Below are positions 1 to 55,300 of a stretch of DNA of 64,000 bases, one piece after another. Position 1 is the stretch's first letter. The number at the start of each line of letters is the position of its first letter. Source of the stretch: Mizuhopecten yessoensis (lineage: Eukaryota); the NCBI RefSeq assembly GCF_002113885.1, contig NW_018408838.1, forward strand, positions 477,108 to 541,107, read 5' to 3'. A model generated the notes under the pieces. It was not told the origin of the DNA and did not search any database. It worked only from the letters and a program-made list of their open reading frames with translations. A program made the position numbers and the translations under genes.

Positions 1-1965
1 ACAACATTGAGTCCTACGTCAGTATACCCTTACGTGGTCCTCAAACAACATTGAGTCCTACGTCAGTATACCCTTACGTGGTCCTCAAACAACATTGAGT
101 CCTACGTCAGTATACCCTTACCTGGTCCTCTAACAACAATGAGTCCTACGTCAGTATACTCTTAGGTGGTCCTCAAACAACTTTGAGTCCTACGTTAGTA
201 AACCCTTACGTGGTCCTCAAACAACATTGTGCCCTACGTCAGTATACCCTTACCTGGTCCTCAAACAACATTGAGTCCTATGTCAGTATACTCTTACGTG
301 GTCCTCAAACAACATTGAGTCCTACGTTAGTATACCCTTACGTGGTCCTCACACAACATTGTGTCCTACAACAATGCACCCTTACGTGGTCCTCAAACAA
401 CACTGTGTCCTACGCCAGTATACCCTTACGTGGTCCTCAAACAACATTGAGTCCTACGTCAATATACTCTTACGTGGTCCTCAAACAACATTCAGTCCTA
501 CGTCAGTATACCCTTACCTGGTCCTCAAACAACCTTGTGTCCCACGTCCATGTACGCTTACGTGGTCCTCACACAACATTGTGTCCTACAACAATGCACC
601 CTTACGTGGTCCTCAAACAACACTGTGTCCTACAACAATGCACCCTTACATGGTCCTGAAACAACACTGTGTCCTACGTCAGTATACCCTGACCTGGTCC
701 TCAAACATCATTGTGTCCCACGTCCATGTACACTTACGTGGTCCTCAAACAACTCTGTGTCCTACGTCAGTATATCCTTACCTGGTCCTCAAACAACATT
801 GTGTCCCACGTCCATGTACACTTACGTGGTCCTCAAACAACTCTGTGTCCTACGTCAGTATATCCTTACCTGGTCCTCAAACAACATTGTGTCCCACGTC
901 CATGTATCCTTACGTGGTCCTCAAACAACATTGAGTCCTACGTCAGTATACCCTTACGTGGTCCTCAAACAACATTGTGTCCCTCGTCCATGTACACTTA
1001 CGTGGTCCTCACACAACATTATGTCCCACGTCCATGTATCCTTACGTGGTCCTCAAACAACATTAAGTCCTACGTCAGTATACCCTTAAGTGGTCCTCAC
1101 ACAACATTGTGTCCTACAACAATGCACCCTTATGTGGTCCTCAAACAACATTATGTCCTTCAATAATGTAACCTTACGTGGTCCTCAATTAATGTTGTGT
1201 TCTACGTCTGGGTACCCTAACGTGGTTTTAAACAACATTGTGTCTTACGTCAGTATACCCTTTCATGGTCCTCAAATATCACTTTGTCCTACTTCAGTGT
1301 ACCCCTAAGTGGTCCTCAAACATCATTTTGTCCTACGTCAGTGTACCCCTACGTGGTCCTCAAACAACATTGAGTCCTACGTCAGTATACCCTTACGTGG
1401 TCCTCAAACAACATTATGTCCTTCAATAATGTAACCTTACGTGGTCCTTAATTAACGTTGTGTTCTACGTCAGTATATCCTTACGTGGTCCACAAACAAC
1501 ATTGAGTCCTACGTCAGTATACCCTTACGTGGTCCTCACACAACATTGTGTCCTACAACAATGCACCCTTATGTGGTCCTCAAACAGCATTATGTCCTTC
1601 AATAATGTAACCTTACGTGGTCCTCAATTAATGTTGTGTTCTACGTCTGGGTACCCTAACGTGGTTTTAAACAACATTGTGTCTTACGTCAGTATACCCT
1701 TTCATGGTCCTCAAATATCACTTTGTCCTACTTCAGTGTACCCCTAAGTGGTCCTCAAACATCATTTTGTCCTACGTCAGTGTACCCCTACGTGGTCCTC
1801 AAACATCATTTTGTCCTACGTCAGTGTACCCCTACGTGGTCCTCAAACATCATTTTGTCCTACGTCAGTGTACCCCTACGTGGTCCTCAAACATCATTTT
1901 GTCCTACCTCAGTGTACCCCTACGTGGTCCTCAAACATCATTGTGTCCTACGTCAGTGTACCCTT
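1..1965. repeat. 44-bp minisatellite/satellite array (~44 copies, runs off the window start)
   Basis: Unit ACAACATTGAGTCCTACGTCAGTATACCCTTACGTGGTCCTCAA. Variant units recur in higher-order blocks, e.g. ~1090-1335 is repeated ~439 bp later at ~1530-1775. Confidence 0.97.
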
Positions 1966-5100: not shown

Positions 5101-5987
5101 TTGACCTGATAAATTCGCAGTTAATTTGCGACGATAATGTATAAAAAGAAAGATTAAAAATACATAAATCCTGGACCGTTTTCCATCAGCTGTACAAGGA
5201 GTTATGGCTCTAGCACTAAGATAAGTTGCACAGTTCAGCATTAATAATGCTATTGCTAATTCTAGAGTATATTTGTATGATTCGTCAGCCAAATGTTTAC
5301 CATTTACTCCTATTATTAGAATTGAACCTCTTCTCTCATTAAGAAAGGACCATGGGGAACCCTTATCAGTGTCCTATAAATTCAAACCAAAATAGTGCTT
5401 TAGTGGCGGAATTGATATTTCTGCAAATTCTCATAATGCACATAAAATTACCTAATTTATTTATATTAATAAAATGTTTTAATGCTTTATTTTGGAACAA
5501 ATTCAGCATTTGATATTCATTTACTATAAACAGAAGGCATGCATTAATTATTCAATCAAAATGACATCCAGTAATCACATGGTTAAGTAAGATAAACGCA
5601 TTGTATTCACCCACAACAATTAACTGATATACAATTGTAATCCATTCAAGGTTTTATGAAAAGTTACCAACTTATGATTGTTGCTATCGTCAGATATTGA
5701 TTTTTGTTAACTGTAATAATGTACCACATTTAGAATAAACATGTTCATGAAGTTATAAAGTGCAACTATCACTAAATAAGTATTTATTTAGTAAGAAAGT
5801 AACTTAGTTCACAAAGTAAGCATTTACTGCCCTATATACATGTATTCGTTGCGTCTACATTGTTTTTAAGTACAAATGGTCAACAGTGTAAAAATTCCAA
5901 TATAATAATGTATCGTTATCTAACCTGTACTTTAGCAATTATTACTATTCTTTTTTTTTTCTTTTGATCAGGATCACCCCCGGGATT

Positions 5988-8767
5988 ATGTCTCCGACTT
6001 TACCACATCTTCTGATTCTTATATCATTAGTTGCTCCATTTTTTTGTCAGAATGCTACACACGTGGTTACCCTGCCGGCGGGCAAGGTTCGCGGTATATT
6101 GGTCCCCGTTCCGGCCTTCAATTCCTCTGTGTATCAATATAGAAAAATACCCTACGCCAAACCTCCTGTAGGAGACTTACGATTCAAGAAACCAATCGGT
6201 CGTATTCCTTGGGCTGGTGTACTAGACGGTACCGAGTTTGGACCAATATGTATGCAGGACAACCCTAAAAATGTCAGCATGTCGGAAGACTGTCTATTTC
6301 TCAACGTGTATGTCCCGCTTAACACGTCGGCATCGGATAATAAACCGGTAATGGTGTTTATACATGGTGGTGCTTATATATCCGGAAGTGGTCAGATCTA
6401 CGATGGATCATACCTTGCTATTTTTGGTGACGCTATAGTGGTGACCATGAACTACCGATTAGGTTTTATGGGATTCATGAGCACGCAAGACGGTTCGTCG
6501 CCAGGAAATTACGGTCTCTGGGACCAACGAATGGCCCTCGTATGGGTAAAAATAAATATTCGCATGTTTGGCGGTGATCCCCAACGTTTCACCATCTTTG
6601 GAGAGTCCGCCGGGGGGTTCAGTGTCGCCCTACAGTGTCTGTATGCTCCAAACAAGGGCGTGTTTAACCAGGCAATGGCACACAGCGGAGTGGCTAATTC
6701 CGTCTTTGCCACCTCACCGTTTGCTAAACAAGCCGCGAGAGTCATCGGAGCAGCTATCGGATGTACAGCTAAAACTTCTGCTGGACTTGTCGACTGCTTA
6801 AGGACAAAACCTGCAGAAGTGATACAAAATGCAATCCATACTAGCACTACAAATGACAACAAAACGCATTATATTTTGCTTCTTGCTCCTGTAGTAGACG
6901 GTGACTTTTTAATAGATACACCCTCAAATCTACTCGGTAACAAATCTTCACTAGCATATAAATTCTTCCGGTCGTTAAATGTGGTTGTCGGCAACGTACA
7001 GTCCGAGGGATCATTAATACTAGACGAAAATCTTAAAGCACTGCAGAGTTTTTATAACTACAATCTTACACTTGGAATTCCCTCTCGAATTTTGTGCGAT
7101 TTGATCATCCCCGGAATAGTTGGTGACTGGCTAGGAAACCACTCTGATGTCATTTCCGCTGTGTGCAGCATGTATAGCATTAATGGCGGGAATACGACAA
7201 CAATGGCGGAACAGGGAAACAAGGCGGTTGAAATGTATGGTGACTTTTTCTTTTTTGTCCCCGCCATATACACGCTGAATGTCCATGCCCAGGGAAACAC
7301 ACAGTCGAAAACATTTCAGTTCTTGTTGACCAGAAATGCCGGATGGGGAGCCGGCGAGCCCTATCCTTCTTGGCTGGAAGGTCCAGGGCATTTTTCAGAA
7401 ATCCCATACTTATTTGGAGCCCAAATTAGACCCGGTGTACAACAACAAGATTTGAAATTATCACTGGATATGCTTACTTATTGGACTAACTTCGCCAGCA
7501 GCGGGTGAGTCGAATATCGGGGTGTAACAAGTGTCTTTATTTGTAATCATAACCTATCGATCTAGTAAACAAAAATTGAGTAGAAAGTCTCAATTACATA
7601 TATCTATGTTGAAAGCTAAACCAATCTTCAATATATCATATGCTTACTTGGGAATTTCTTTTTTGTGTCTTTTCATATTTGAGATCACTATTAATAACTG
7701 TTACTATATAGCTATTACAATACCTTTTAGGCGAATTTGGTATTAAAGATAGATGTTCGGTGATATACGACATTATTTCATTATTTCAAACAAAATACTG
7801 TTATATCTTATGCAACAAAAAGTTCTAAACATTCCATAAGGACTTACATTGTGTGTTTGTCCGTCTGTGTAAGTATATGCGCGCGTGTGTGCATGTGCGT
7901 AAGTGCGTGTGGTTACACGTAGCATATCGAGACACGTGCATGCCCCTTCCCTATGTTGAAGGATACTCGTCGAGTTATCATTCTGTTACACGTAAAGAAA
8001 CATTAATAAAATTCCTAAATATAGATATTCAATTCATGACCGTACTATATACTGAAATTCATTTCGAACCTTTTCTATTGCAGACCAATTGAGGTGGGGG
8101 AAACTAAAATTTGTTTCGAAACTTTTATTGTGCAGACAAAAAAAAGTGTTAGATGGTAATTAAATTTAGTTGGACCATTCGTGTAATAGACAAACAGAGG
8201 TACGGTAATACTGAATTTCGGTCTAAACCTTTTGTTCAGTAAAAAGCAGAGTTTGCATGATACTGAAATTCAGTTGAAACCCTTTGAATTTCCTTTGATT
8301 CACGTAAATAAAAGTAAGATAATTCTTAAATTTATTTGGGAACCCATTGTTCAGAAGAAAATATAGTTTATATCATACTGAAATTTAGTCGGAGCTCTTC
8401 GTTCAGAAAATACATTGTATTTAACAGGCCTAGTGATTGAAATACCATTGCTTGACACCCAAGTCGGTAATATAATTTCTTACGGTGTTGCAGGGACCCA
8501 AATGTCGGGTGGCCGACGGATGTCAATTGGCCGGCCTACACTCCTTCAGCTGGTGCCTACATCGACCTGGACACGCCATGCACGCGTAAAACCAAAATGT
8601 TTGAAAAGCGTGTTAACTTTTGGAGGAAAACCGTTCCAACCATGATTATAATTGACAACGCTTTGTCGCGTGCAGGAAGTGTGTCCACGAGTCTGTCAGT
8701 GTATACTGTCACCTTTGTCCTCATCAGTGTAATAATGAAATCGTTTCAGCAACAAGTGATCATATAG
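5988..8767 (+). CDS. Type-B carboxylesterase/cholinesterase-family alpha/beta hydrolase, ~596 aa; join(5988..7504,8494..8767)
   Basis: Acceptor poly-T...CAG at 5970-5971, then signal peptide MSPTLPHLLILISLVAPFFC. Family motifs: IPYAKPPVGDLRF, SEDCLFLNVY, oxyanion hole HGGAY, NYRLG, GNYGLWDQ, nucleophile FGESAG, acid residue GNVQSEG, catalytic His GHFSEIPYLFG. The phase-2 donor GG|GTGAGT (7505) joins acceptor TTGCAG (8493) to give the conserved WTNFASSGDPN...NWPAY, and the frame ends in a hydrophobic tail and TAG at 8765-8767. Confidence 0.95.
8045..8412. repeat. Degenerate ~52-bp intronic tandem repeat (~7 copies)
   Basis: Recurrent ATACTGAAATT(C/T)A..GAACCTTT..(G/T)CAGA near 8050, 8101, 8208, 8260, 8322 and 8375. 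Confidence 0.6.
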
Positions 8768-9074
8768 GGACAACCTTTGTGTCAGATACCCCACCTTCTG
8801 CCAAATAACCACACCGGCTGTAAAGATGATAAACTGCAGTCAAGAGGGCTTGTGTAGGACTTAAGCTGTATAGAGCGCTGTTAAAGGGGAGAGCTTTAAA
8901 AGTTTCATGTACAGGGCATTGTGAAGGGGGAGCTCAGGTACGTTTTTGTCAATATGGGGCACTGTTGAGGGACAAATATGATTTATACATAATTTTGTAA
9001 GATTAAGTATGTAAAAGGGCATTGCAGATTAAGCGGGTTTAAAGGCTTTAAATCTCTCTTAAATTGTACTAATT

Positions 9075-11545
9075 GGAAAGGTTCATAGACAGGGCTTTTA
9101 TTGGTATTTACCTGTATAGAGCACAGCTGATAGGCAGGGCTTGTATTGGTATTAGCTTGTATAGGACACTGCTGTTAGACAGGGCTTGTATTTGTATTTG
9201 CCTGTATAGGGCAATGCTGATAGACAGTATTGACATAAGCCTGTATAGAATAATGTTGATAGAAAGGGCTTGTATTGGTATTAGCCTGAATAGAACAATG
9301 CTGATAGACAGGGCTTGTATTGACATTAGCCTGAATAGAACAATGCTGATAGTCAGGGCTTGTATTGGTAAAAGCTTGTATAGGGCACTGCTGATAGAAA
9401 GGGCTTGTGTTGATATTATTCTGTATAAGGCACTGCTGATAGACAGGGCTTGTATTGGTATTAGTCTGTATACGGCACTGCTGATAGACAGGGCTTGTAC
9501 TGATATTAGTCTGTATAAGGGACTGCTGATAGACAGGGTTTGTATTGATATTAGTCTGTATACGGCACTGCTGATAGACAGGGCTTGTATTGATATTAGT
9601 CTGTATAAGGCACTGCTGATAGACAGGGCTTGTATTGGTAAAAGCTTGTATAAGGCACTGCTGATATTCAGGGCTTGTATTTGTATTAGCTTGTATAAGG
9701 CACTGCTGATAGACAGGGCTTGTATTGGTATTAGTCTATATTAGGCGCTGCTGATAGACAAGGCTTGTATTGATATTAGTCTGTATAAGGCACTGCTGAT
9801 AGACAGGGCTTGTATTGGTATTAGTCTGTATAAGGCACTGCTGATAGAAAGGGCTTGTATTGGTATTAGCTTGTATAAGGCACTGCTGATAGACAGGGCT
9901 TGTATTGGTATTAGTCTGTATACGGCACTGATGATAGACAGGGCTTGTATTGATATTAGTCTGTATAAGGCACTGCTGATAGACAGGGCTTGTATTGGTA
10001 TTAGCTTGCATAAAGCACTGCTGATAGACAGGGTTTGTACTGATATAAGTATGCATACGGCACTGCTGATACACAGGGCTTGTATTGATATTAGTATGTA
10101 TACGGCACTGCTGATAGACAGGGCTTGTATTGGTATTAGTCTGTATACGGCACTGATGATAGACAGGGCTTGTATTGGTATTAGTCTGTATACGGCACTG
10201 ATGATAGACAGGGCTTGTATTGGTATTAGTCTGTATACGGCACTGATGATAGACAGGGCTTGTATTGGTATTAGTCTGTATAAGGCGCTGCTGATAGACA
10301 GGGCTTGTATTGATATTAGTTTGCATACGGCACTGCTGATAGACAGGGATTGTATTGGTATTAGTCTGTATAAGGCGCTGCTGATAGACAGGGCTTGTAC
10401 TTATATTAGTCTGTATAAGGCACTGCTGATAGACAGGGCTTGTATTGATATTAGTCTGTATAAGACACTGCTGATAGACAGGGCTTGTACTGATATTAGT
10501 TTGCATACGGCACTGCTGATAGACAGGGCTTGTATTGGTATTAGTCTGTATACGGCACTGATGATAGACAGGGCTTGTATTGTTATTAGTCTGTATAAGG
10601 CACCGATGATAGACAGGGCTTGTATTGGTATTAGTGTGTATACGGCACTGATGATAGACAGGGCTTGTATTGGTATTAGTCTGTAAATGGCACTGATGAT
10701 AGACAGGGCTTGTATTGATATTAGTATGTATACGGCACTGATGATAGACAGGGCTTGTATTGGTATTAGTGTTTATACGGCACTGATTATAGACAGGGCT
10801 TGTATTGGTATTAGTCTGTATAAGGCACTGCTGATAGACAGGGCTTGTATTGGTATTAGTTTGTATAAGGCACTGCTGATTGACAGGGCTTGTACTGATA
10901 TTAGTCTGTATAAGGCACTGCTGATAGACAGGGTTTGTACTGATATTAGTCTGTATAAGGCACTGCTGATAGACAGGGGTTGTACTGATATTAGTCTGTA
11001 TAAGGCACTGCTGATCGACAGGGTTTGTACTGATATTAGTCTGTATAAGGCACTGCTGATAGATAGGGCTTGTATTGGTATTAGTCTGTATACGGCACTG
11101 CTGATAGACAGTGCTTGTACTGATATCAGTCTGTATAAGGCACTGCTGATAGACAGGGTTTGTACTGATATTAGTCTGTATAAGGCACTGCTGATAGACA
11201 GGGCTTGTATTGATATTAGTCTGTATACGGCCCCGCCGATAGACAGGCCTTGTACTGATATTAGTCTGTATAAGGCACTGCCGATAGACAGGGCTTGTAT
11301 TGGTATTAGTCTGTATACGGCACTGCTGATAGACAGTGCTTGTACTGGTATCAGTCTGTATAAGGCACTGCTGATAGACAGGGATTGCACTGATATTAGT
11401 CTGTATAAGGCACTGCTGATAGACAGGGTTTGTATTGGTATAAGTCTGTATACGGCACTGCTGATAGACAGGGTTTGTACTGATATTAGTCTGTATAAGG
11501 CACTGCTGATAGACAGGGCTTGTGCTGTATAAGACACTGCTGCTA
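9075..11545. repeat. 45-bp minisatellite (~54 copies)
   Basis: Unit CTGTATAAGGCACTGCTGATAGACAGGGCTTGTATTGGTATTAGT, with degenerate copies extending back to ~8845. Confidence 0.97.
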
Positions 11546-13959: not shown

Positions 13960-14550
13960 TTAATATCTACCATGAACCAGTTTCTTTTATACTATGTAAC
14001 AGTTTATATCCACAATGTAATAGTTCGTATATACCATGTAAACAGTGTATATCTACTGTGCAACAGCTTAAATCTTCTATGTAACAAGTAGTATATTCTA
14101 TGTATACGTGATAGGTTGTTTATACCATGTATACAGTTTATATCTACTGCGTGACAGTTTATATCGACCACGTATTCTGATATATCTACTTTGTAACAGT
14201 TTTTATATTCTATGTAACAGTTAATATATACTCTGTAACAGTACATATATGTAATATAACAGTTAATATATACTCTGTAACAGTACATACATGTAATATA
14301 ACAGTTAATATATACTCTGTAACAGTAAATACATGTAATATAACAGTTAATATATACTCTGTAACAGTACATATATGTAATATAACAGTTAATATATACT
14401 CTATAACAGTACATATATGTAATATAACACTTAATATATACTCTGTAACAGTACATATATGTAATATAACAGTTAATATATACTCTGTAACCTAAATATA
14501 TGTAATATAACAGTTAATATATACTCTGTAACAATAAATACATGTAATAT
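13960..14550. repeat. 42-bp repeat (dimer of 21-bp units), degenerate at the left and homogeneous from ~14215
   Basis: Unit AACAGTTAATATATACTCTGTAACAGTACATATATGTAATAT. Confidence 0.92.
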
Positions 14551-16094: not shown

Positions 16095-17746
16095 TACACT
16101 TATCTGGTTTTCCAACTATCCATATATCACTTATCCTGTTGTTCAACTATTCAGATATTAATACTAGGCCAGGTACATTATCTCACTTTTCAGATACCAT
16201 TAATCATATTGTCCCACTATCCAGCTATAAATAGTCAAGTTGTCAAACTATCCTAATATCAATCAACCTGTTGTCTCACTATCCAGATATCAATAACCCA
16301 GTTGCCTCACTATCCAGATGGCATTAATCAAGTCGTCACACTATCAAGCTTTTACTACTATTACTAATCCAATTGTCCAACTTTCGAGATAGCACTTACC
16401 TAGTTGTCTCACTATCCAGATATCATAAACCCAGTTGTACAACTGTTAAAATATTTCTAATCCACTGGTCCAACTATCGATATATCACTATTCTAGTCAC
16501 TATCCAGATATCACTAATCCAGTGGTCCTACTATCGCGATGACACTTACCCAGTGGTCCTACTATTGCGATAGCACTAATACAATGGTCCCACTTTCCAT
16601 ATATCACTTATCCAGTGGTCCCACTATCCAGATATCACTTATCCAATGGTCCCACTATCCAGATATCACTTATCTAGGGGTCCCACTATCCAGAAATCAC
16701 TTATCCAGTGGTGCCACTATCCAGATATCACTTATCCAATGCTCCCACTATCCAGATATCACTTATCCAGTGGTCCCTCTATCCAGATATCACTTATCCA
16801 GTGGTCCCTCTATCCAGATATCACTTATCCAGTGGTCCCACTACCCAGATATCACTTATCCAATGGTCCCACTATCCAGAAATCACTTATCCAGTGGTGC
16901 CACTATCCAGATATCACTTATCCAATGCTCCCACTATCCAGATATCTCTTATTCAGTGGTCCCACTATCCAGATATCACTTATCAAGTGGTCCCACTATC
17001 CAGATATCACTTATCAAGTGGTCCCACTATCCAGATATCACTTATCAAGTGGTCCCACTATCCAGATATCACTTATCAAGGGGTCCCACTATCCAGATAT
17101 CACTTATCCAATGCTCCCACTATCCAGATATCACTTATCCAGTGGTCCCCCTATCCAGATAGCACTTATCCAGTGGCCCCACTATCCAGATATCACTTAT
17201 CCAGTGGTCCCACTACCCAGATATCACTTATCCAATGGTCCCACTATCCAGACATCACTTATCCAGTGGTCTCACTATCCAGATATCACTTATCCAGTGG
17301 TCTCACTATCCAGATATCACTTATCCAGTGGTCTCACTATCCAGATATCACTTATCCAGTGGTCCCCCTATCCAGATAGCACTTATCCAGTGGCCCCACT
17401 ATCCAGATATCACTTATCCAGTGGTCCCGCTATCCAGAGAGCACTTATCCAGTGGTCCCACTATCCAGATATTACTTATCCAGTGCTCCCACTATCCAGA
17501 AATCACTTATCCAGTGGTCCCACTATCCAGATATCACTTATCAAGGGGTCCCACTATCCAGATATCACTTATCCAGTGCTCCCACTATCCAGATATCACT
17601 TATCCAATGGTTCCACTATCCAGATATCACTTATCCAGTGGTCTCACTATCCAGATATCACTTATCCAGTGGTCCCGCTATCCAGAGAGCACTTATCCAG
17701 TGGTCCCACTATCCAGATATCACCTATCCAGTGGCCCCACTATCCA
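16095..17746. repeat. 31-bp minisatellite (15+16 dimer), homogeneous 16590-17746 with a degenerate left flank
   Basis: Unit TATCCAGATATCACTTATCCAGTGGTCCCAC. Confidence 0.96.
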
Positions 17747-18180
17747 CAACTATGGGCATATAGGGTCAAAATAATCTTTAAGTATAGAACAAGCATTTGT
17801 AGAATCAGAATTATAATAATATTTAGCATCGTCTATCTTATAAAATCAGCAGCAGGCTAGTCTTTGAAAGTCAGAATAGTGCAAGGTTGTAAAATATGAA
17901 CTAAAATATCGTGTAGAGATTGAAACGCTGAACAGTTAATAACATGTCCGATCGTGTCCAAAACACAGCTAACGGTGTTTACCTTAGTTAGCGTCGATTG
18001 GAAGCTATGCTCACTTGCAAAGTAACCATGACACTTTATATTTTGTATTAATGTTATTCATTCATCGCCAAATAACGTAGGGAACCCATCTCCTATTATA
18101 TTCAAAAGTAAAATTTAGAATATGATTTTACGAAATACATTGTTTTCATTACGTTGCAGATATAGTTATATAGATCAAAC

Positions 18181-23840: not shown

Positions 23841-25524
23841 TTATTTAGACTCCCTTCCATATCTGCGTCTTACTGCACCACGTCTGACAATGACACTTTC
23901 AGTGCTCTCATCACTCCGTCGTGATCCGGAATCTTGTTCTCCGTTTCGGTCACCATTTAGACAAGACATGCTATCAACTTCACAAGGGTGAAGGTATGTA
24001 GGATCCTCTTCGCCACTGATAGACTCGACGCAATTGTAATACATAGCGTTATCCCAGGAAAGACTGCGCGTGTATCGTTCTTCATTACCATTCTTATCCT
24101 TAGAATTAGAGGACTCGTTAACTTCACATTGGTCTTTCAACGTGTCGTTTTCGTAAAGTGGCTCTTTGAAGTCGATTCCAATATCTCTTACATTACAATA
24201 AATTGGCGCTTCTAAACATTCACTACCATCAACACATTTTTCATATGTATGTTCGCTCGTGTCTGTCAACGCACTGAGGTCGCGTGGCATGGACATGTAT
24301 GGATTGTCTATGACATTGTAAGGTCCAGATGCAGTCCTACTAATGGGCAATAGTGATTGCTGTTTGTTGTCTTTTTCACTCCTCATAGCTTTTCTACAGT
24401 TGCATTTGATGTATTCTGTTTCAGTTCGGACCGCCTCTGCTAGTTCTGGGTATTTAGATTTCAAACATTCCCATAGAACGCTTAATCCGTTACTTTTAGC
24501 ATCTTTTGTGCATTTGAATATAACAATCCACGACTCCCGGCAACTTTGCCTTTGAAGGACATACTGAACATCCTCCCGTAGAAGCACTCCCGAACTGTAC
24601 AATCTATCCACAACATCACCGATGTCCACGTCGCGGGCAATTTTACAAGCCAGACACTCTCTGGTGGTAAACATGCTTTTATCCTTAGATTCAGTTTTAA
24701 CAAGTTTCTCGAAGAGATGCGAATGAGAGAGGCGTAGAGCCTGTTTGAATTTTTCGAACTTTTTTGGGCCGTATACGGCCAATTGTGTAAGAAGTGTCCT
24801 AGTCTTTTTCCTTCTGTTACGTATCCGCCGGAGCGACTCCACATCGGCCGTACACATGACTTCCTCCTCCAACAGTTGGTCCAGTAATTGTGTTGAATCC
24901 AACTGCAAGTCGTTCATCAAATGCAAGTGATTTTCTCTCAAGACCGTCTGGTACGGCTCCTCTTGTTGACAGGGGGACTCTGATGGACATGATAGTAAAC
25001 ATGGAATTACATGTTCACATATGTATGCTGAACTCTTATTTGTATGTACACAAATCGATATTGTTAATGGAAACGGGTGCATTATACATATTTATATAGT
25101 ATAACATTGTTATAAGACACTGGGAAACATTTGACACCCATACATTTTGATACCGTTTTAGCGCCAACGACGTAAAAATATTGTAATATTACTATATAAT
25201 TTATTCTAAGAGCAAATAAAAGACAAGTGACAAACCTCTATCACACGGTTTAACTTGAAGGTTATATGTGGAGCCGTCACTACAGTTGTCCTGGCTGTGA
25301 GTAGGCACCACTGGGGTGTGTCTCTTTCTCTTAGCGGCGGGTAGGTATGCCGGGCGTGAGATGTGGTCGCGCGTGCTTGCACACCCCAGGATTTTCTCCA
25401 TTTGGTTCACTGCCGACTGTATCTTCATGGCTGCAAGCTCTGTCCCGAGACGTTCCAATTCAGCAGCAGATAGGTTATTTAAATCACATAATATGAATTT
25501 TATTTGATCCTTTGAATAATCCAT
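23841..25524 (-). CDS. Gene A: tandem CARD/death-fold protein with a Tyr-motif-rich acidic tail, ~475 aa; complement(join(23841..24979,25236..25524))
   Basis: The exon begins TTTCAG|ATG at 25524. Phase-1 donor G|GTTTGT (25236) joins acceptor CATCAG| (24979) in frame. CARD-like segment YQTVLRENHLHLMNDLQLDSTQLLDQLLEEEVM...RRKKTRTLLTQLAVYGPKKFEKFKQALRLSHSHLFEKL, then a second death-fold-like segment RDVDIGDVVDRLYSSGVL...SKYPELAEAV. Clearly homologous to gene B. A short upstream coding exon cannot be excluded. Confidence 0.85.
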
Positions 25525-34882: not shown

Positions 34883-35779
34883 TCATTTTCGTTTAAACGC
34901 TTTGCGACAGAAGGAATCGCGGGATAGCAAGCTACACTGCTGTAACCTTTCAACATCAGACCCGTATTGGTCAGACGAGGATACGCGATCTTCGTTACAA
35001 GCCACATTTTCAGTTTCAAACTCAATCTCAACATAGTCACTGTCATCATCTTGAACAATTATTTTTTGTCCACAGGATGTACAGGATTCTGGTCCAGCCA
35101 GTGGACAGTAAGGGACACACACTGGACAATGTACCGAGGAGCAGACCACACTATTGAACGTTTTGCATACATCTGCCTTCAAGAGGGTAGAAGGCGAGTG
35201 GGAAGACATTGTTTTAGGCGGGTGTGGCGAAATTATGCTATTGTCATCTTCCCAAATTAATTCATACACATCTGTATTTTGCTTATCAGACATGCATTTC
35301 CGAGTTGAAACTGTTAATTGTTGAGTGGTCGGTGCTTCTACAGGTTGAATCGTCTCGTAATCGTCAGTGTCCGAATACTGTTCAGCAGTATCAATATCGA
35401 CAGCTCTTCTCCCTAGGTATGATCCAGTAGAGGATTCTACAGGTACACTGTGTTCCTGGTACTTATTACTCTTTAAACAACTATTCCCCAGGGCCTTTTG
35501 CTCGCCATGATATCTACAATAAATTCTTTGACCATCGTGCACTTTCATAGAGTCGTAAATGTGGAACTCCGGCTGGTTATCCCCCCTTAATGTTTCATAT
35601 AAATGTTCACCCTGCACTAACTGTAGCTTAGTGTACATATTGGATCTCGTACAGTCATCTGCTGCGTCTTTCTGCCATTGCCTCTGCTTTCCTCGAACAC
35701 ATTGACCTCGGATAAGCTGTTTGTTTACCATGGTGCTGTCGTTATTTCTGATTTCAGTTTCCTTAGTTCCAGCAGCCAT
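34883..35779 (-). CDS. Gene C: 298-aa predicted-disordered cytosolic protein with multiple Tyr-based motifs (ITAM-like) and a Cys cluster
   Basis: Non-repetitive 897-bp ORF in AT-rich surroundings. Preceded by acceptor TTTTTCCAG| at 35857, with upstream donors at 37161 and 37152. Motifs YTKL-x8-YETL, YDSM, DDYETI, VYELI, SDYVEI and CSSVHCPVCVPYCPLAGPESCTSC. No recognisable globular family. Confidence 0.7.
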   Translation of the reverse strand: MAAGTKETEIRNNDSTMVNKQLIRGQCVRGKQRQWQKDAADDCTRSNMYTKLQLVQGEHLYETLRGDNQPEFHIYDSMKVHDGQRIYCRYHGEQKALGNSCLKSNKYQEHSVPVESSTGSYLGRRAVDIDTAEQYSDTDDYETIQPVEAPTTQQLTVSTRKCMSDKQNTDVYELIWEDDNSIISPHPPKTMSSHSPSTLLKADVCKTFNSVVCSSVHCPVCVPYCPLAGPESCTSCGQKIIVQDDDSDYVEIEFETENVACNEDRVSSSDQYGSDVERLQQCSLLSRDSFCRKAFKRK

Positions 35780-38892: not shown

Positions 38893-41800
38893 ATGGCAGA
38901 TACCACGTCATACCTTCAGGTATGTAGAATTAATTTTAGACCAGGAAGTCAGCAGTGCAAAGTACCTTACTGCTATTTGTTATATCTAAAAACTTCAGCG
39001 AACGAGATGGCTTGTCATTATAACCGATATAATGAAACGTACAGATTTCAAGCGGAACAACTGCTTTGAATGTGCGTGGCAATGTATCTTACCTGTATAA
39101 CTACACATACACATACGTGTAAAACTCTGACTAGTTATGACAAGTGACGGAACAGCCAAGTTATACATTTATATACAGACTGGGGATTTCCTTTCTATAA
39201 TTTGTTGATTGTCGATGACAATTCCCATTACAGGGAGTATATAAGTATGTGTTTGGGTATTTCAACTATAACCTAAGTACTTATATACGTACGGCTCTTT
39301 ATCAAATTTGAAATATTTGCGATGTTTTTGCTAAAACAATATTTCCAAAAGCCTTTTAGTCTTCAATCGGGTGTACAATGTGTGCCATTCTGTTTTTAAA
39401 TATATAATAGATATATCTGAATTTGCACCAGAGTTAGAATAATTAGAATGACCAGTCCGTTACCTTCACATTCCGATACATTGATGGTGCTTTGTCAGAG
39501 ACTGATTAGAATTAAGAATGTATTCTCCACAAATGTAATCAAGATATCATTTACAATGAACTACTTTTAATATCTCAAATTCATCAAAAGCTTACTGAAA
39601 TAACCACTAACTTCAAAAGTTTATATTAATGACGACGATCCAAATATCAGGATCGTTAAATCTCCTCTCGTCATTACAAGCGCAGTATGGAAGGAGCCGT
39701 TCTTTCGGAGTTTACAGTTCACATTTTATTCGCTAATTTTCAACTACCTTAACTTAACATTTAAAAGAACAGGCAAACAACCTGTGTCATGTTTCAGCTG
39801 TTGTAACATGTTCAGGGGAGAGGAATTAGGATAAGCCCTTAGCTTGTTTTCCCATCCTCCTTATTCTATGTTTTGAAGTTTGTTAATGTGCAAAAATAGG
39901 AAATAAAAAACTGTTTAAACTAACATGTTCACTTAATGTTAGATTACTAGTGCCCAGCATACTTTGCTAATTTTATGGAAGACACGACGACAGGTTTCGT
40001 ATTTGATTGGGTATTGGGGGTTCATAATTTAATGTCCTCCCTTCCATTTTGGTGTCTTCTCGATTGTTCGTGTTGTCTTCTACTGAGTATTATTGTAGTC
40101 ATTCCTTTTGTGTTAGTCTCACTTTCATTCTTTGTGTCGTCTTCTCTTTTTGATACACAATGCATTGCTTAATATGTTACTATATACATGTACATTAATC
40201 AACGTTTGCAATGTTTTTTTTGTTTTGCTAGAATTATAAAACTATGGATGGTCTATTAAAATTTCAGACTATTTTGGAGACTCAAAAACAACTTCAAGAA
40301 GCTACAAGAAGTAACAGTGTGAACATAGCGAGAATGCATGGCGAGCTTACAGCCAGCATGGGCAGCATTAAGGCTCTTCTCCATGTACTAAATCATCGCA
40401 TCGAAAACAATGTCTTTTCCCCGTCGGTGTCGCGACATTACGAGTCGCAACTAAGGTCACCTCCAGGTCACACACGTACAGGTACAGCCAGAAATCTATC
40501 TTTTATGCTACCAACATTTACTCTAAATATATCGCAGAAAAAAAGTGTAAGCCACATTTAACACAATTGAACATGAAACGTCTAATTATTTTGTCGAACA
40601 ATTTCTGTATAGCTTTGAATTGTATCAGTATGTTTTTAATATTTTCTGCAGGGCTATCAATACAGCCGACTAGAGGGCGAAAGAAGAAAATCAACAATGT
40701 TTTGCTTTAGAAAGTAGAAAAAACACATATAATTATAATTATTATTAAGATCAACATCATTCTTTTGAGTCCGTTTTATAGTACTATTGTTCACAATCTT
40801 TTCTTTTGTATCTTTTTTTACGTATTTATTTATTTTTTGAAAATATAACGAGTTTTCTTTTGATGAAAAGAGGAAAGACTTGTTAATTGTAACTAGGTAA
40901 TATACATATATCTTAAATATTTGATTGGGTTAAATATTTGATTATAACATTGATTTACTTATTGATTAAGCTGCCAGGTCTCTCTTTGTTGCCATGTTTA
41001 AGAGACTTCAGTACGACATAACTTAATTGATAAGCTGTGTAAATAGTAAACCAAGCATGACATAGTTCCTTTTTGCACTAACAGTATATCAAAACGATTA
41101 ATAAGTTTTCTTGATCTTTTCAAAAAGTATACAAAAGTTTATGTTATAGTCTCATAGTCATATATCATCTTCCTTACACCTTACACCTTACATGAACTTA
41201 CCAACATTCCAAACCTTCTTTTTTCCCTCTATTTCCACATGTTCTAGCGATAAAAATTTGGAAAATGGTGTTGAAAACTTTATCTAAACATCTTTTTTCT
41301 CATGGCAATACTAGTAAAAAGTACAGCTGTAATAAGCAAATCAAATGACCATATCCTTTAAATGAACGACTTGTAGGCGGCACGCACTTTGTTTTAATTT
41401 ACAGGCGAAGAAGGTGACATAAGCGGGACGGAGGGTGTACACAGAGAGTGTTTACAGGAACATTTTGAGTACATCGTCAAGGAACTAATGATAGACGGTA
41501 CTACATTCATCGATGAACTTCAAGAGGATAGCTGTTTGACGGAGGGCGAGGTGTCCGATATACGTTACCAAAGGGATAACAAAACAAAGATACGGAAGCT
41601 CATATATGCCATTTACACCAGGGACAAAGCAACGTTTGGTAAATTTATGAAGATGCTTCAACGTGACAATAATCATGTTCATGAAAAAATCCAGCAGGCT
41701 TATTCCACCAAACTGCAAGAAGGCCCTAGGTCTTCAGAATGTTTGATATGTGTAATCAAACGGGATGTTGATCTTCGCCGTGTGGCTGACAAGCTATGTA

Positions 41801-43182
41801 GTCATTTTATCATAGACATGGACTACCTAAATACATTACTGTCGTTTTCAGATCATAGTCTACCAAGAGTTCGTAAAGAATTCTGGGGATATGTTTTCGC
41901 ACAAATAGACAAATCTTCTGAAAGGGCAGAAAAACTTTCAAAATTACGCGATGCATTGCATGAGAGTAAATACAAAGGGCTTGCTGAGAAACTGGGATAT
42001 TGGAAGCGTCCACAAATGGCATGTAATTGCAATCGCGTTTCGAGTCTAGGTTTTCAGGCGAACTTTTCAGATTCATTTAGTACTAGTACTAGCATTGGTG
42101 ACTTGAGCACCACGTCCAACATTAGATCAAAGAGTCAGGTGAGTTTGCAGTCAGTGTCTTCTCTAGAAGAGGATGACGGTATTGGCAGTCAGACATTTGG
42201 CGGAAACATTCCGTACACTGTGGCATGGCTAAACAGTTCGCCGGCGACCAGCCATGAAAGCGAACCCTGGTCATACCCCGAATCCGAGAAAAATCTGTCA
42301 TCTTCAACTCAAGCAGTCCTCACATCAGTAAACTCCGCGAATGTCATTACTGATAACAAAGAAAACGCGATCTCGCTTTCGCTTACATCCATTGTCAATA
42401 AATTAAACGAAGATAATGGTGAAGGTGATAGACATCATGCCTCTAGCAGATCTTTCCCGACACGACTCAACACTGTGAAAACAGACATAATGCATACTCC
42501 GGATGTATCTACAGATGAAGTTAGTTCTCTATTGGAACCGCAGCGACTTGAACTGAACATAGAAGCTGCAAACAAACTAAAAACAGAACTGGAAATGATG
42601 CCCACACCTTTGCCAGTTGTAGATGCCTACACTGGACGAAAGAAAGTTTACACAAAGAAACGGCACACAAGAACCAGGTCTGATGATAGTTCAAAGATCA
42701 GGCTGGAATACGACCTGCTTCGTAGTGGAGAACAGGACCGACTTCGGCTGATAAACGGGTTGGTAGATACGCCCGAAAGAGGCATATCTGAAATATTTTA
42801 CAGCAACATCAACCGGATTCCACAGAGGGACACAACAGACAAAAGTATTAAAAGTGAAACATGCGATGAAACATGTCACGTATCAAATACAGATAACGGA
42901 ATACCAGTGACAACTCCTTATCATTCCCAAGCACTCGAGCAAACATCTACCGACAAGACTAAGTCTCCAATATATTCCCAAACATTATGCAGGTCGGATA
43001 GAAACAACAATCCCCAGTATGCGACAGGTCTGATAATGCTGACTCCGTCAAGACACCTCGACCCCCTCTCGTCAGGGCTAGGGTCCCGTAATGACAACAC
43101 AGCCTGTACGAAAAAACGGAGCAAGAAAGAAAAGAACCGAATGCGAAACCAACCAGGTCGCCTTAGATTTGATACTTATTAA
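38893..43182 (+). CDS. Gene B: tandem CARD/death-fold protein with an N-terminal helical segment and a long Ser/Thr-rich tail, ~684 aa; join(38893..38919,40232..40481,41405..43182)
   Basis: MADTTSYLQ|GTATGT (phase 0) joins TTTTGCTAG|AATTATAAAACTATG in frame. Phase-1 donor G|GTACAG (40481) joins TTTACAG|GC (41405) in frame with the 564-aa ORF. CARD-like HRECLQEHFEYIVKELMIDGTTFIDELQEDSCLTEGEVSDIR...KIRKLIYAI...TFGKFMKML, followed by ECLIC.IKRDVD...SKYKGLAEKL...CNC as in gene A. Confidence 0.85.
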
Positions 43183-52300: not shown

Positions 52301-55300
52301 GTGGCTGTTCTCAAGTATACTCTGTATACCAGTAATATGATTCCTGTGTGTAGAATTACTACACACAACATACGTATGACATTGAAGTCAGAATGTTCTT
52401 ACCTTGGGAGACAGTCCCCAGTTATGGTGATTGGCTGTTACATTAAACAAGGTCAGGGAAGTCAGTATGTCTGTTGGTAAGTCTGCAAACAAACGACTTT
52501 GTCCAAAACCTACAAACAAATCAGCAATAACTGACACAGTCTGACTTAATTTATCCGATGTGAAAGCTAATCCATGTGCTCGAAGTATTGTAGGACACAT
52601 TGACACAGAGAGATAATGTTATACCTGTTAAGAGAATGCCTGAATATAAAAAAAATTGATAGACATACCTTCTGTGATGACATATGAACAATGATGGACA
52701 TACCTGATGTAGACCTATCAACAGATGGGCATAACTGATATAGACCTATCAAGAGATGGGCATACCTGATGTAGACCTATCAACAGATGGGCATACCTGA
52801 TGTAGACCTATCAACAGATGGGCATACCTGATGTAGACCTATCAACAGATGGGCATACCTGCTGTTAGGAAACTTGAACAGTGTTGGACTTACATTGTAC
52901 AAGTTGTTAGGACACATGGACAGTTTAAATGTTACGGTTGTGGTCAGATGTACATACATTGTATATGGTCAGATGTACATATACATTGTATATGGTCATA
53001 TGTACAAACATTGTATATGGTCAGATGTACATACATTGTATATGGTCAGATGTACATACATTGTATATAGACAGTTGTACATACATTGTATATGGTCAGA
53101 TGTACATATACATTGTATATGGTCATATGAACATACATTGTATATGGTCAGATGTACATACATTGTATATGGTCATATGTACATACATTGTATATGGTCA
53201 GATGTACATACATTGTATATGGTCATATGTACATACATTGTATATGGTCAGATGTACATACATTGTATATGGTCATATGTACATACATTGTATATGGTCA
53301 GATGTACATACATTGTATATGGTCAGATGTACATACATTGTATATGGTCAGATGTACATACATTGTATATGGTCAGATGTACATACATTGTATATGGTCA
53401 GATGTACATACATTGTATATGGTCAGATGTACATACATTGTATATGGTCAGATGTACATACATTGTATATGGACAGATGTACACACATTGTATATGGTCA
53501 GATGTACATACATTGAATATGGTCAGATGTACATACATCGTATATGGTCAGATGTACATACATTGTACATGGACAGATGTACATACATTGTGTACCTGTT
53601 ACAATGTAAGGACATATGGACATGCCTGTTGTTAGGACACATGGACAGTAATGGACATACATTGTATTAACTGTTAGGACGTATGGTCAGATGATAATCA
53701 TATAGACATAATACTGTCAGGACACATGGACAGATGGTTTAAATGTAACTGTTGTGAACATACATATGTAAGGACGCTAGGACAAATGGTCATATTTATG
53801 GTAATGCCATAGATGGTCATAAGTGTTGTCAGGACATGTTCACTTGGACAGATATCATAACTGTTGTGAACATATGGACAGATGGACAGACTTGAAGTAA
53901 GGACAGGTAGACATACCTTCTGTGAGGACACATGGACATATGGACACACCTGCTGGTATGTGGACAGGTGAGAGATATATATATAGACATACCTGATGTG
54001 AGGTTGAGGGGCATCATTCTCTGAGCATGAAGGTGGCTTAGGAGGTCTTGACCTGATGTAAGAACAGTCAGCTGCTGGAATCCCTGACAGGTACCCCACA
54101 AGGGGAAGTAATCTCCTTTGTCATTAGCCTGTATTATGAACATGTTTGAGAATAAAAGGGATTCAAATTTGTTGTAATAAGGCTACATCCTTTAATGATT
54201 TCAAGTGCAACAACAGAGAATATTTTAGTATTTCAAGTGCTTGCAATTATTATGAGATGTGCATAGTCTAAAATCAGCCTTACTCAAGTGCATCTTACAT
54301 TGTACAACATGATCCCTTTTCTAGATGTTGTCATTGATTTTTATGTGTTTTTATATCTAATATTAAAAATTATTCATTTGACACCACTTGAATGCTACAG
54401 CACAAAAAATATACTAAGCCACATTCTGCCTTCTGTAGGATCTGACCTATGACCTTCAACAGGCAGACATACTACCACCTGGCCATTGAGTTCAAACTGT
54501 GAGCTCACAATAAACCAAAAACATTTACAGAAGATACTTTGGTCTGGCTATTACCTTCAGAGCCATATTGTATAGAAGTTTGGCTGCTTTGGCAAAGTAG
54601 GATGTCAGAATGTTGACGCCTCCACCAGGAAACACCACACTGAAAAGAAGTTGAAATAATGTAAACCGCTTTTAAGGAGTCCCCAGATTAAAACCTAAGT
54701 AAAGGGAGATAACTTCATTACTAATACTATTAGCTGTGTACATTATTACTTTCTCTTGTTTCGGAGAATAGCGGGAAATATTTGTCTTGTATAAACAGAG
54801 TATACGAGGGCAGTTGCCTGTCTCGTGCAGAGGTTTTGACCAATCAGATTGAGGCACATGCTAAGGGTAGTTTACGGGTACGTGTATGATCATTCTAGCT
54901 TCGCACCTCGCACGGCGTAGTACAGCTGGAAATAAAATTGTAGCAGAATTTTATGTTTATGTAACAGATGTATGTGTGGGCATCGTCATATTTAGGAAAT
55001 CCCAGCATCAATTTTGTAAAAAACCTTAAGCATTGTCGGGCTGGTACACCTCCTGTCGCGCCTAATAAGGTTTTCAGGTTGGGTGGCGCGCTTGGTTTTA
55101 CGTTAAGAGATGTAGGGCAATGAACCATGCGAGGGTATATGTGGGAGGATTGTTTGTGTGAACGGTAAATGAAGTCAGAGTAATTATTTTGTTAATGCGT
55201 ATTCATTATATTCATATTATATTTATGAATAAATGCTGACTCCGTTCGTGCTATCGGTCGAGCAGCTATTTGCTATTTACAGCTGTAGGTGTTGTGTTGT

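What the first reader, a model, noticed from the sequence alone, without database searches (positions are those of the whole stretch)
24396..24960. Second death-fold domain bracketed by conserved CxxC...CxC: putative zinc-clasped CARD (gene A)
Seen: A has ECLACKIARDVDIGDVVDRLYS...W..IF...LSVLWECL.SKYPELAE...IKCNC and B has ECLICVIKRDVDLRRVADKLCS...W..VF...LSKLRDAL.ESKYKGLAE...MACNC. The four Cys are kept at both ends of the ~90-100 aa helical domain although the rest is highly diverged. Known: the N- and C-termini of a six-helix death fold lie close together. Inference: the CxxC and CxC pairs bind one Zn and staple the domain, perhaps as a metal or redox switch. I do not recognise this as a named domain.
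Basis: partly seen in the sequence, partly recalled or inferred. Interest (0 to 1): 0.75.

Follow-up and report, generated by a model that had tools for sequence, protein, structure and literature searches.

The report
Cysteine-clasped second CARD in bivalve adaptors
Two neighbouring scallop genes encode adaptor-like proteins whose second CARD (a six-helix signalling domain) is bracketed by four almost invariant cysteines, shared by a large bivalve-only family and most likely holding one zinc ion, a feature not described for CARDs.

Summary
**Observation: confirmed.**
- Gene A is Mizuhopecten yessoensis LOC110464676. Gene B lies 17 kb away.
- Both encode CARD1, then an 87-97 aa helical domain running from CxxC to CxC, then a long tail with no Pfam domain.

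**The second domain is a named domain, a CARD.**
- On its own it passes Pfam's CARD threshold in gene A.
- A confident AlphaFold2 model superposes on the Apaf-1 CARD (Z 10.5, rmsd 2.3 Å over 82 residues).

**The cysteine bracket defines a family.**
- A profile search found 91 cluster representatives. Every named one is a bivalve and none is characterised.
- Across 96 domains at about 25% identity, the four Cys are 95, 95, 89 and 91 of 96. They are among the seven most conserved of 110 columns.
- Natural variants keep metal ligands: CxxH...CxC, CxxC...HxC and CxxC...CxxC.
- CxxC sits at the N-cap of helix 1. A hydrophobic residue plus CxC follows helix 6 by 8-10 residues.

**What is inferred.**
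- The best reading is one structural Zn(Cys)4 site tying the two ends of the CARD together.

**Precedents.** The CD4/CD8-Lck zinc clasp uses the same motif pair between two chains. CARD9's CARD binds zinc at a different site.

The parts
25236..25524 (-). Gene A exon 1 (coding from the ATG at 25524; donor GT at 25235-25234)
   Evidence: Read from the sequence. The database protein P0001 (LOC110464676, 475 aa) reads ...KPCDR|ESPC... across this junction.
23841..24979 (-). Gene A exon 2 (acceptor AG at 24981-24980; stop included): CARD1, Cys-bracketed CARD2 and a 179 aa tail
   Evidence: ORF; identical to P0001 residues 96-475.
24702..24947 (-). Gene A CARD1
   Evidence: Pfam PF00619, E 1.3e-16, ORF residues 46-127, profile 2-82 of 85.
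24396..24656 (-). Gene A second CARD, from the first to the fourth conserved Cys (P0001 C205..C291)
   Evidence: Translation. Pfam CARD on this domain alone: E 1.8e-5, 25.1 bits, above the 23.9 cut-off. AF2 pLDDT 86.9, pTM 0.79. VIA Z 10.5 to the Apaf-1 CARD.
24645..24656 (-). CxxC (C205, C208 of P0001) at the N-cap and first turn of helix 1
   Evidence: 95 of 96 for each Cys. The helix starts at model residue 9, with Cys at residues 8 and 11.
24396..24404 (-). CxC (C289, C291 of P0001), 8-10 residues after helix 6
   Evidence: 89 and 91 of 96. The middle residue varies over 17 amino acids, and the residue two before the first Cys is hydrophobic in 82 of 87.
41405..43182 (+). Gene B large exon (acceptor AG at 41403-41404): CARD1, Cys-bracketed CARD2 and a Ser/Thr-rich tail
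   Evidence: Sequence. Open frame of 594 aa. Orthologues P0005-P0008 of 582-671 aa.
41740..42030 (+). Gene B second CARD, from the first to the fourth conserved Cys (CxxC 41740-41751; CxC 42022-42030)
   Evidence: Translation. Family profile match E 4.4e-25, positions 3-103.

Best explanation
Genes A and B are members of a bivalve family of tandem-CARD adaptor-like proteins: CARD1, then CARD2, then a long tail with no Pfam domain. CARD2 is a genuine six-helix CARD with an add-on. A CxxC forms the N-cap of helix 1. A hydrophobic residue plus CxC sits in an 8-10 residue extension after helix 6. In a death fold, the start of helix 1 and the end of helix 6 lie at the same end of the bundle, so the four thiolates most likely bind one structural Zn2+. 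That site would tie the entering linker, helix 1 and the exiting tail into one knot. Shown: the fold, the motif, its conservation and the ligand-type substitutions. Inferred: metal binding, zinc as the metal, and intramolecular geometry. By analogy with CARD9, the probable effect is to stabilise the monomeric CARD and set the threshold for CARD-CARD polymerisation.
For: - CARD identity: Pfam CARD above threshold for domain 2 alone; protein-language-model features point to CARD; an AF2 model from a 96-sequence alignment has pLDDT 86.9 and pTM 0.79; VIA Z 10.5, rmsd 2.3 over 82 residues to the Apaf-1 CARD, with nearly all Z>=8 rows being CARDs; ESM Atlas neighbours are CARDs.
- Family: 91 representatives at E<=1e-3, nearly all covering profile positions 5-107; 89 of 96 have CARD1 directly upstream.
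- Cys conservation: 95/95/89/91 of 96, ranks 2, 3, 7 and 5 of 110 columns, with no fifth conserved Cys or His.
- Ligand-type variants: C-x-x-H in all 15 cluster members read of P0083; H-x-C in P0009, P0011 and P0020; CxxC in place of CxC in P0038 and P0090.
- The x of CxC is free, while the residue at -2 is hydrophobic in 82 of 87.
- The loop carrying CxC keeps moderate confidence; pLDDT falls below 50 only from residue 97.
- Precedents: the CxxC plus CxC(P) zinc clasp of Lck with CD4/CD8 (PMC7355011); sub-nanomolar Zn binding by the CARD9 CARD, which hinders filament formation (PMC6624267).
Against: - No Cys-Cys distance was measured, because structure prediction returns no coordinates.
- The CxC loop is less confident than the helices: the 91-100 block has mean pLDDT 62.
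- Four representatives keep only three of the four ligands (P0012, P0031, P0034, P0053).
- A CxxC at a helix N-terminus is also the geometry of thioredoxin-type redox sites.
- All homologues are bivalve proteins without any experimental characterisation.
Confidence: 0.6

Rival explanations
1. The four Cys bind a metal between chains. The CxxC of one molecule and the CxC of another share a Zn, as in the Lck-CD4 clasp or the Rad50 hook. Zinc would then drive dimerisation or filament seeding instead of stapling one domain.
For: The only solved CxxC plus CxC site I could cite is intermolecular (PMC7355011). CARDs act by oligomerising. The CxC lies on a loop of lower confidence.
Against: Both motifs sit in the same chain, at the two ends of one domain, and those ends are adjacent in the death fold. 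The C1-C4 span stays within 81-100 residues across the family. A hydrophobic residue two before CxC suggests the tail docks on its own domain.
Confidence: 0.13
2. The Cys pairs are redox-active, forming a CxxC and/or CxC disulfide or cross-disulfides. They would act as an oxidative-burst sensor with no bound metal.
For: A CxxC at a helix N-terminus is the thioredoxin-type arrangement. The proteins look immune-related and would meet oxidative stress. This rests on general knowledge; nothing here tests it.
Against: Cys-to-His replacements at two different positions are stable in separate clades, in 15 of 15 cluster members read for one of them. That fits metal ligands and would abolish a disulfide. 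The proteins have no signal peptide or Pfam secretory domain, and only 2 of 96 have any TM-like segment, so they sit in a reducing compartment.
Confidence: 0.1
3. The Cys serve something other than Zn. One option is a rubredoxin-like Fe or Fe-S centre. Another is S-palmitoylation of the CxC, with an unrelated role for the CxxC.
For: Cys4 sites can hold Fe. CxC or CC next to basic residues is a common acylation context, and R or K often follows the fourth Cys. Most members lack a TM segment.
Against: Co-conservation of both pairs across about 25% identity, together with the His substitutions, fits a single shared site. Acylation sites are rarely this invariant or this fixed in register.
Confidence: 0.07

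Closest known systems
CARD domain (Pfam PF00619), closest to the Apaf-1 CARD
   Same: Six-helix death fold. Pfam match above threshold for gene A's domain 2. Best structural match is Apaf-1: Z 10.5, rmsd 2.3 over 82 residues. Best PDB sequence match of the family profile is the Apaf-1 CARD, sharing the Y-x-x-[IL]-A motif of helix 6.
   Different: Canonical CARDs have no CxxC at the helix 1 N-cap and no CxC extension after helix 6. The structural matches cover model residues 7/8-88 only. The PDB sequence match is weak (E 0.03).
Zinc clasp of Lck with CD4/CD8alpha
   Same: The same ligand pair: CxxC plus CxC, forming one Zn site (PMC7355011; Kim et al. 2003, cited there).
   Different: That site is intermolecular, between two short unstructured peptides. 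Here both motifs are in one chain and flank a folded CARD. There is no sequence relationship.
Zinc site of the CARD9 CARD (PDB 6e25)
   Same: A CARD that binds Zn2+ tightly. Zn stabilises the monomer and hinders filament formation (PMC6624267). 6e25 is a structural neighbour of the model (Z 9.0).
   Different: CARD9 uses Cys10 and His73, which lie inside the CARD. From the aligned ranges (model 7..86 to chain 15..97), these do not correspond to the four Cys here. The family has no conserved Cys or His at the equivalent of His73.
Tandem CARDs of RIG-I/MDA5
   Same: Two consecutive CARDs at the start of an innate-immunity-type protein. Foldseek lists RIG-I and MDA5 2CARD entries for the two-domain model.
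   Different: TM is only 0.32-0.37 with rmsd about 16 Å. The model's inter-domain orientation is not reliable (pTM 0.48). There is no helicase, and RIG-I CARD2 has no Cys bracket.

Membership tests
CARD (PF00619) | Sequence match to the Pfam CARD profile above the gathering score | tested here: met
   Gene A domain 2 alone: 25.1 bits against a cut-off of 23.9, E 1.8e-5, profile 10-82 of 85. The best of the 9 scallop-type sequences gives 7.6e-8. Only 4 of the 9 match, probably the A-type, at E<=10; B-type domain 2 does not.
CARD (PF00619) | Six-helix antiparallel death fold | tested here: met
   The AF2 model has six helices, pLDDT 86.9 and pTM 0.79. VIA Z 10.5 to Apaf-1, and CARDs fill the top rows. 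This is a predicted structure, not a solved one.
CARD (PF00619) | Homotypic CARD-CARD binding or polymerisation | not testable with these tools
   Needs pull-down, DAmFRET or EM.
Lck-CD4/CD8 type zinc clasp | A CxxC pair plus a CxC pair | tested here: met
   Present in A and B and in 84 of 96 family domains in the strict form.
Lck-CD4/CD8 type zinc clasp | Tetrahedral coordination of one Zn2+ by the four thiolates | not testable with these tools
   No coordinates are returned for models, and there are no metal data.
Lck-CD4/CD8 type zinc clasp | Ligand pairs supplied by two different proteins | tested here: not met
   Both pairs are in one chain, 81-100 residues apart. Inter-chain use is not excluded.
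CARD9-type CARD zinc site | Ligands equivalent to CARD9 Cys10 and His73 | tested here: not met
   Only aligned ranges are available. No conserved Cys or His column exists other than the four bracket positions.
MAVS-like adaptor (CARD plus C-terminal tail anchor) | C-terminal transmembrane anchor | tested here: not met
   A Kyte-Doolittle scan finds none in A, B or 94 of the 96 proteins scanned. Only P0066 (Sinanodonta) has a C-terminal anchor.

The most novel reading that the evidence does not exclude
The Cys4 knot is a regulated latch. Zinc loss or thiol oxidation, for example during an oxidative burst or zinc flux in haemocytes, would free helix 1 and the tail of CARD2. That would switch these tandem-CARD adaptors into a polymerising, signalling state. 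If so, this would be a metal- or redox-gated death-fold switch specific to bivalve immunity.
Probability: 0.15. Interest if true: 0.8.

Novelty: new variant of a known kind. Interest (0 to 1): 0.55.

Why it matters
CARDs transmit apoptotic and innate-immune signals by polymerising, and how that polymerisation is held in check is an active question. CARD9 showed that zinc can tune a CARD filament, but through a two-residue site limited to that protein.

This is a whole family in which a complete four-ligand site has been fixed at the domain's termini since before the major bivalve lineages separated. The family has at least 91 clusters at 50% identity.

If the site binds zinc, it gives a natural, mutable handle (Cys to Ser, chelation, oxidation) for testing how terminal rigidity controls CARD assembly. 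It would also define an uncharacterised adaptor family in animals of aquaculture importance whose death-fold repertoires are greatly expanded. The motif is a simple annotation signature: CxxC, then about 75-95 residues of CARD, then a hydrophobic residue plus x-C-x-C.

Tried and rejected
- **RNA evidence.** Expression of A and B was not checked. Homologues occur as intron-free 1.8-2 kb Logan contigs, which may be transcripts; I did not verify this.
- **PDB sequence searches.** Nothing significant for domain 2 with the 9-sequence profile. Only E 0.03 to Apaf-1 with the 96-sequence profile.
- **Word-based search with the full-length alignment A4.** It returned only 6 proteins and added one taxon, Ruditapes.
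- **GCK domain (PF07802).** The hit was E 0.02-0.86, below threshold, and was rejected.
- **MAVS-like reading.** Oyster CgMAVS is described as CARD plus Death plus TM (PMC5557890). It was rejected for A and B because neither has a TM segment. Whether CgMAVS carries the Cys bracket was not tested, as I had no sequence reference for it.
- **RIG-I-like rigid 2CARD.** Not supported; inter-domain confidence is low (pTM 0.48).
- **Literature.** Searches found no description of a Cys4-bracketed CARD.
- **Spliced model.** The spliced protein I used is the database entry P0001, which the tools returned.

Full report
**Where we are.** The window is contig C5511:477108-541107 of a 988 Mb, 82,659-contig assembly. 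It is Mizuhopecten yessoensis, the Yesso scallop, because the protein encoded here is letter-for-letter NCBI "uncharacterized protein LOC110464676 isoform X2" (P0001, 475 aa).

**Gene models.**
- Gene A lies on the minus strand. Exon 1 is 25524-25236 and exon 2 is 24979-23841. I read the splice sites from the sequence, and they reproduce P0001 across the junction (...KPCDR|ESPC...).
- I built no joined model of my own. P0001 is the database's protein, and all searches used it or single exons by reference.
- Gene B is a large plus-strand exon, 41405-43182. Its orthologues are 582-671 aa.

**Observation.**
- The stated coordinates 24396-24960 cover both CARD1 and the second domain and are out of frame at 24960.
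- The Cys-bracketed domain itself is 24396-24656 on the minus strand: 87 aa, CLAC...CNC.
- In gene B it is 41740-42030 on the plus strand: 97 aa, CLIC...CNC.
- A and B align at 28% identity over 186 aa (E 3e-14), with all four Cys in register.
- In four A-type orthologues, gene B and four B-type relatives, the four Cys are invariant while the x of CxC varies. Three of the four B-type relatives are named scallops; P0008 is an unnamed Logan sequence.

**What the domain is.**
- The first domain is a Pfam CARD (A: E 1.3e-16; B: 2.2e-5).
- The second domain is also a CARD. Scanned alone, gene A's domain 2 scores 25.1 bits against Pfam's cut-off of 23.9 (E 1.8e-5, profile 10-82 of 85). The best of the nine scallop-type sequences reaches 7.6e-8. 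B-type copies are too diverged to pass alone.
- Protein-language-model features point to CARD clusters (0.90, 182 shared features).
- An AF2 model of CARD1 plus domain 2 gives two well-folded helical domains (mean pLDDT 80.5) but an unreliable mutual orientation (pTM 0.48). Foldseek finds CARDs.
- An AF2 model of domain 2 alone, from a 96-sequence alignment, has pLDDT 86.9 and pTM 0.79. Its helices are at 9-16, 23-28, 34-42, 46-59, 64-72 and 77-84.
- VIA-align against 48,161 PDB representatives puts the Apaf-1 CARD first (Z 10.5, rmsd 2.3 Å, 82 residues, model 7-88). Nearly all rows with Z>=8 are CARDs. ESM Atlas neighbours are CARDs too.
- So "not a named domain" is wrong for the fold. What has no name is the bracket.

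**Where the cysteines sit.**
- Cys8 precedes helix 1 and Cys11 is in its first turn.
- Cys92 and Cys94 lie 8-10 residues after helix 6, outside every structural alignment to canonical CARDs.
- pLDDT drops below 50 only at residues 1-3 and 97-100. The two Cys-bearing segments are therefore moderately confident although they are not helical.
- It is established knowledge of the death fold that helices 1, 5 and 6 pack together, and that the start of helix 1 and the end of helix 6 lie at the same end of the bundle. The geometry is therefore plausible.
- I could not measure it. No coordinates are exposed.

**The family.**
- A profile of domain 2, searched exhaustively against 1.84 billion cluster representatives, found 91 proteins at E<=1e-3 (19 at <=1e-10). 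Almost all cover profile positions 5-107, that is, both motifs.
- 89 of 96 have a CARD1-like domain directly upstream. Domain 2 starts within the first 40-89 residues of the other seven, which leaves little or no room for a CARD1, so they are probably N-terminally cut.
- Pfam finds only CARD, in 87 of 96, and no tail domain.
- Only one member, P0066 from Sinanodonta, has a C-terminal anchor.
- Every named member is a bivalve, and all are "uncharacterized" or "CARD domain-containing": Mizuhopecten, Pecten, Argopecten, Ylistrum, Saccostrea, Ostrea, Mytilus, Pinctada, Sinanodonta, Mercenaria and Ruditapes. Many hits are unnamed, so restriction to bivalves is provisional.
- In the scallop genome only A and B carry the full domain.
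- In a maximum-likelihood tree, A groups with a Pinctada protein (98/94) and B falls in the other half. The A/B split is therefore old (few columns and bootstrap not fully settled).

**Conservation and variants.**
- In 96 domains at about 25% identity, the four Cys are present in 95, 95, 89 and 91.
- By column entropy they rank 2, 3, 7 and 5 of 110, alongside W56, V17 and L26. No fifth Cys or His column is conserved.
- The x of CxC takes 17 different residues.
- The residue two before the third Cys is hydrophobic in 82 of 87. The C1-C4 span is 81-100 residues.
- The exceptions are informative:
  - P0083 has C-x-x-H, as do all 15 cluster members read, which come from many contigs.
  - P0009, P0011 and P0020 have H-x-C.
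  - P0038 and P0090 have CxxC instead of CxC.
  - Four representatives keep three ligands.
- Cys-to-His swaps and tolerant spacing are what metal sites show. They are not what disulfides show.

**Mechanism.**
- Shown: a CARD with a conserved four-ligand bracket at its termini.
- Inferred (about 0.6): one structural Zn(Cys)4 site joins the linker and helix 1 N-cap to the post-helix-6 tail.
- Two precedents support this:
  - The Lck CxxC plus CD4/CD8 CxC(P) zinc clasp shows that this motif pair makes one Zn site (PMC7355011).
  - The CARD9 CARD binds Zn with sub-nanomolar affinity via Cys10 and His73. That slows domain swapping and hinders filament formation (PMC6624267).
- By analogy, the clasp would stabilise the monomeric CARD2 and set the threshold for CARD assembly. 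A true switch role is speculative.
- Rivals:
  - an inter-chain Zn bridge (0.13);
  - a redox disulfide site (0.10), disfavoured by the His variants and the apparently intracellular location;
  - Fe, Fe-S or acylation (0.07).

**Novelty.** Literature searches found no Cys4-bracketed CARD. I class it as a new variant of a known kind.

**Limits.**
- The N run near 59.2-59.7 kb was left untouched.

Noticed in passing
L012, L013/L014, L015, L016 (G000 contigs C4483, C3502/C5552, C4628): Other scallop tandem-CARD open frames (281-879 aa) have a different cysteine pattern. A CxxC (C-x-K/E-C-x-P) lies about 20 residues before CARD2, a CC pair lies in its first helix, and there is no CxC after helix 6. 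Their helix 6 shares the KY-x-[YF]-I motif with the family studied here. This may be a second, related metal-site layout.
   Followed up: partly
P0066 (Sinanodonta woodiana, 750 aa): This is the only family representative with a C-terminal tail anchor (hydrophobic window 729-747), a MAVS-like topology. Oyster CgMAVS is described as CARD plus Death plus TM (PMC5557890). Whether it carries the Cys bracket was not tested.
   Followed up: partly
window 23841-24395 (-), tail of gene A: Short motifs in the otherwise variable tail are conserved among the four scallop A orthologues. Examples are SGPY-x-x-IDN-x-YMS-x-P, SWDN-x-x-Y, EDPTY-x-HPC and the C-terminal IVRRGA-x-RR-x-x-GR-x-SK.
   Followed up: no
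window 5964-7508 (+): A 514 aa open frame is a carboxylesterase-family protein (Pfam COesterase, E 7.8e-123).
   Followed up: partly
window 34883-35779 (-): The 298 aa open frame between A and B has no Pfam match.
   Followed up: partly
window 183-1166, 9073-11537, 14004-14456, 16539-17860, 52874-53670: Long open frames on both strands are made of short repeated peptide units. These look like minisatellite-type tandem repeats, not genes.
   Followed up: no
The A-B linkage may therefore predate the scallop radiation.
   Followed up: no
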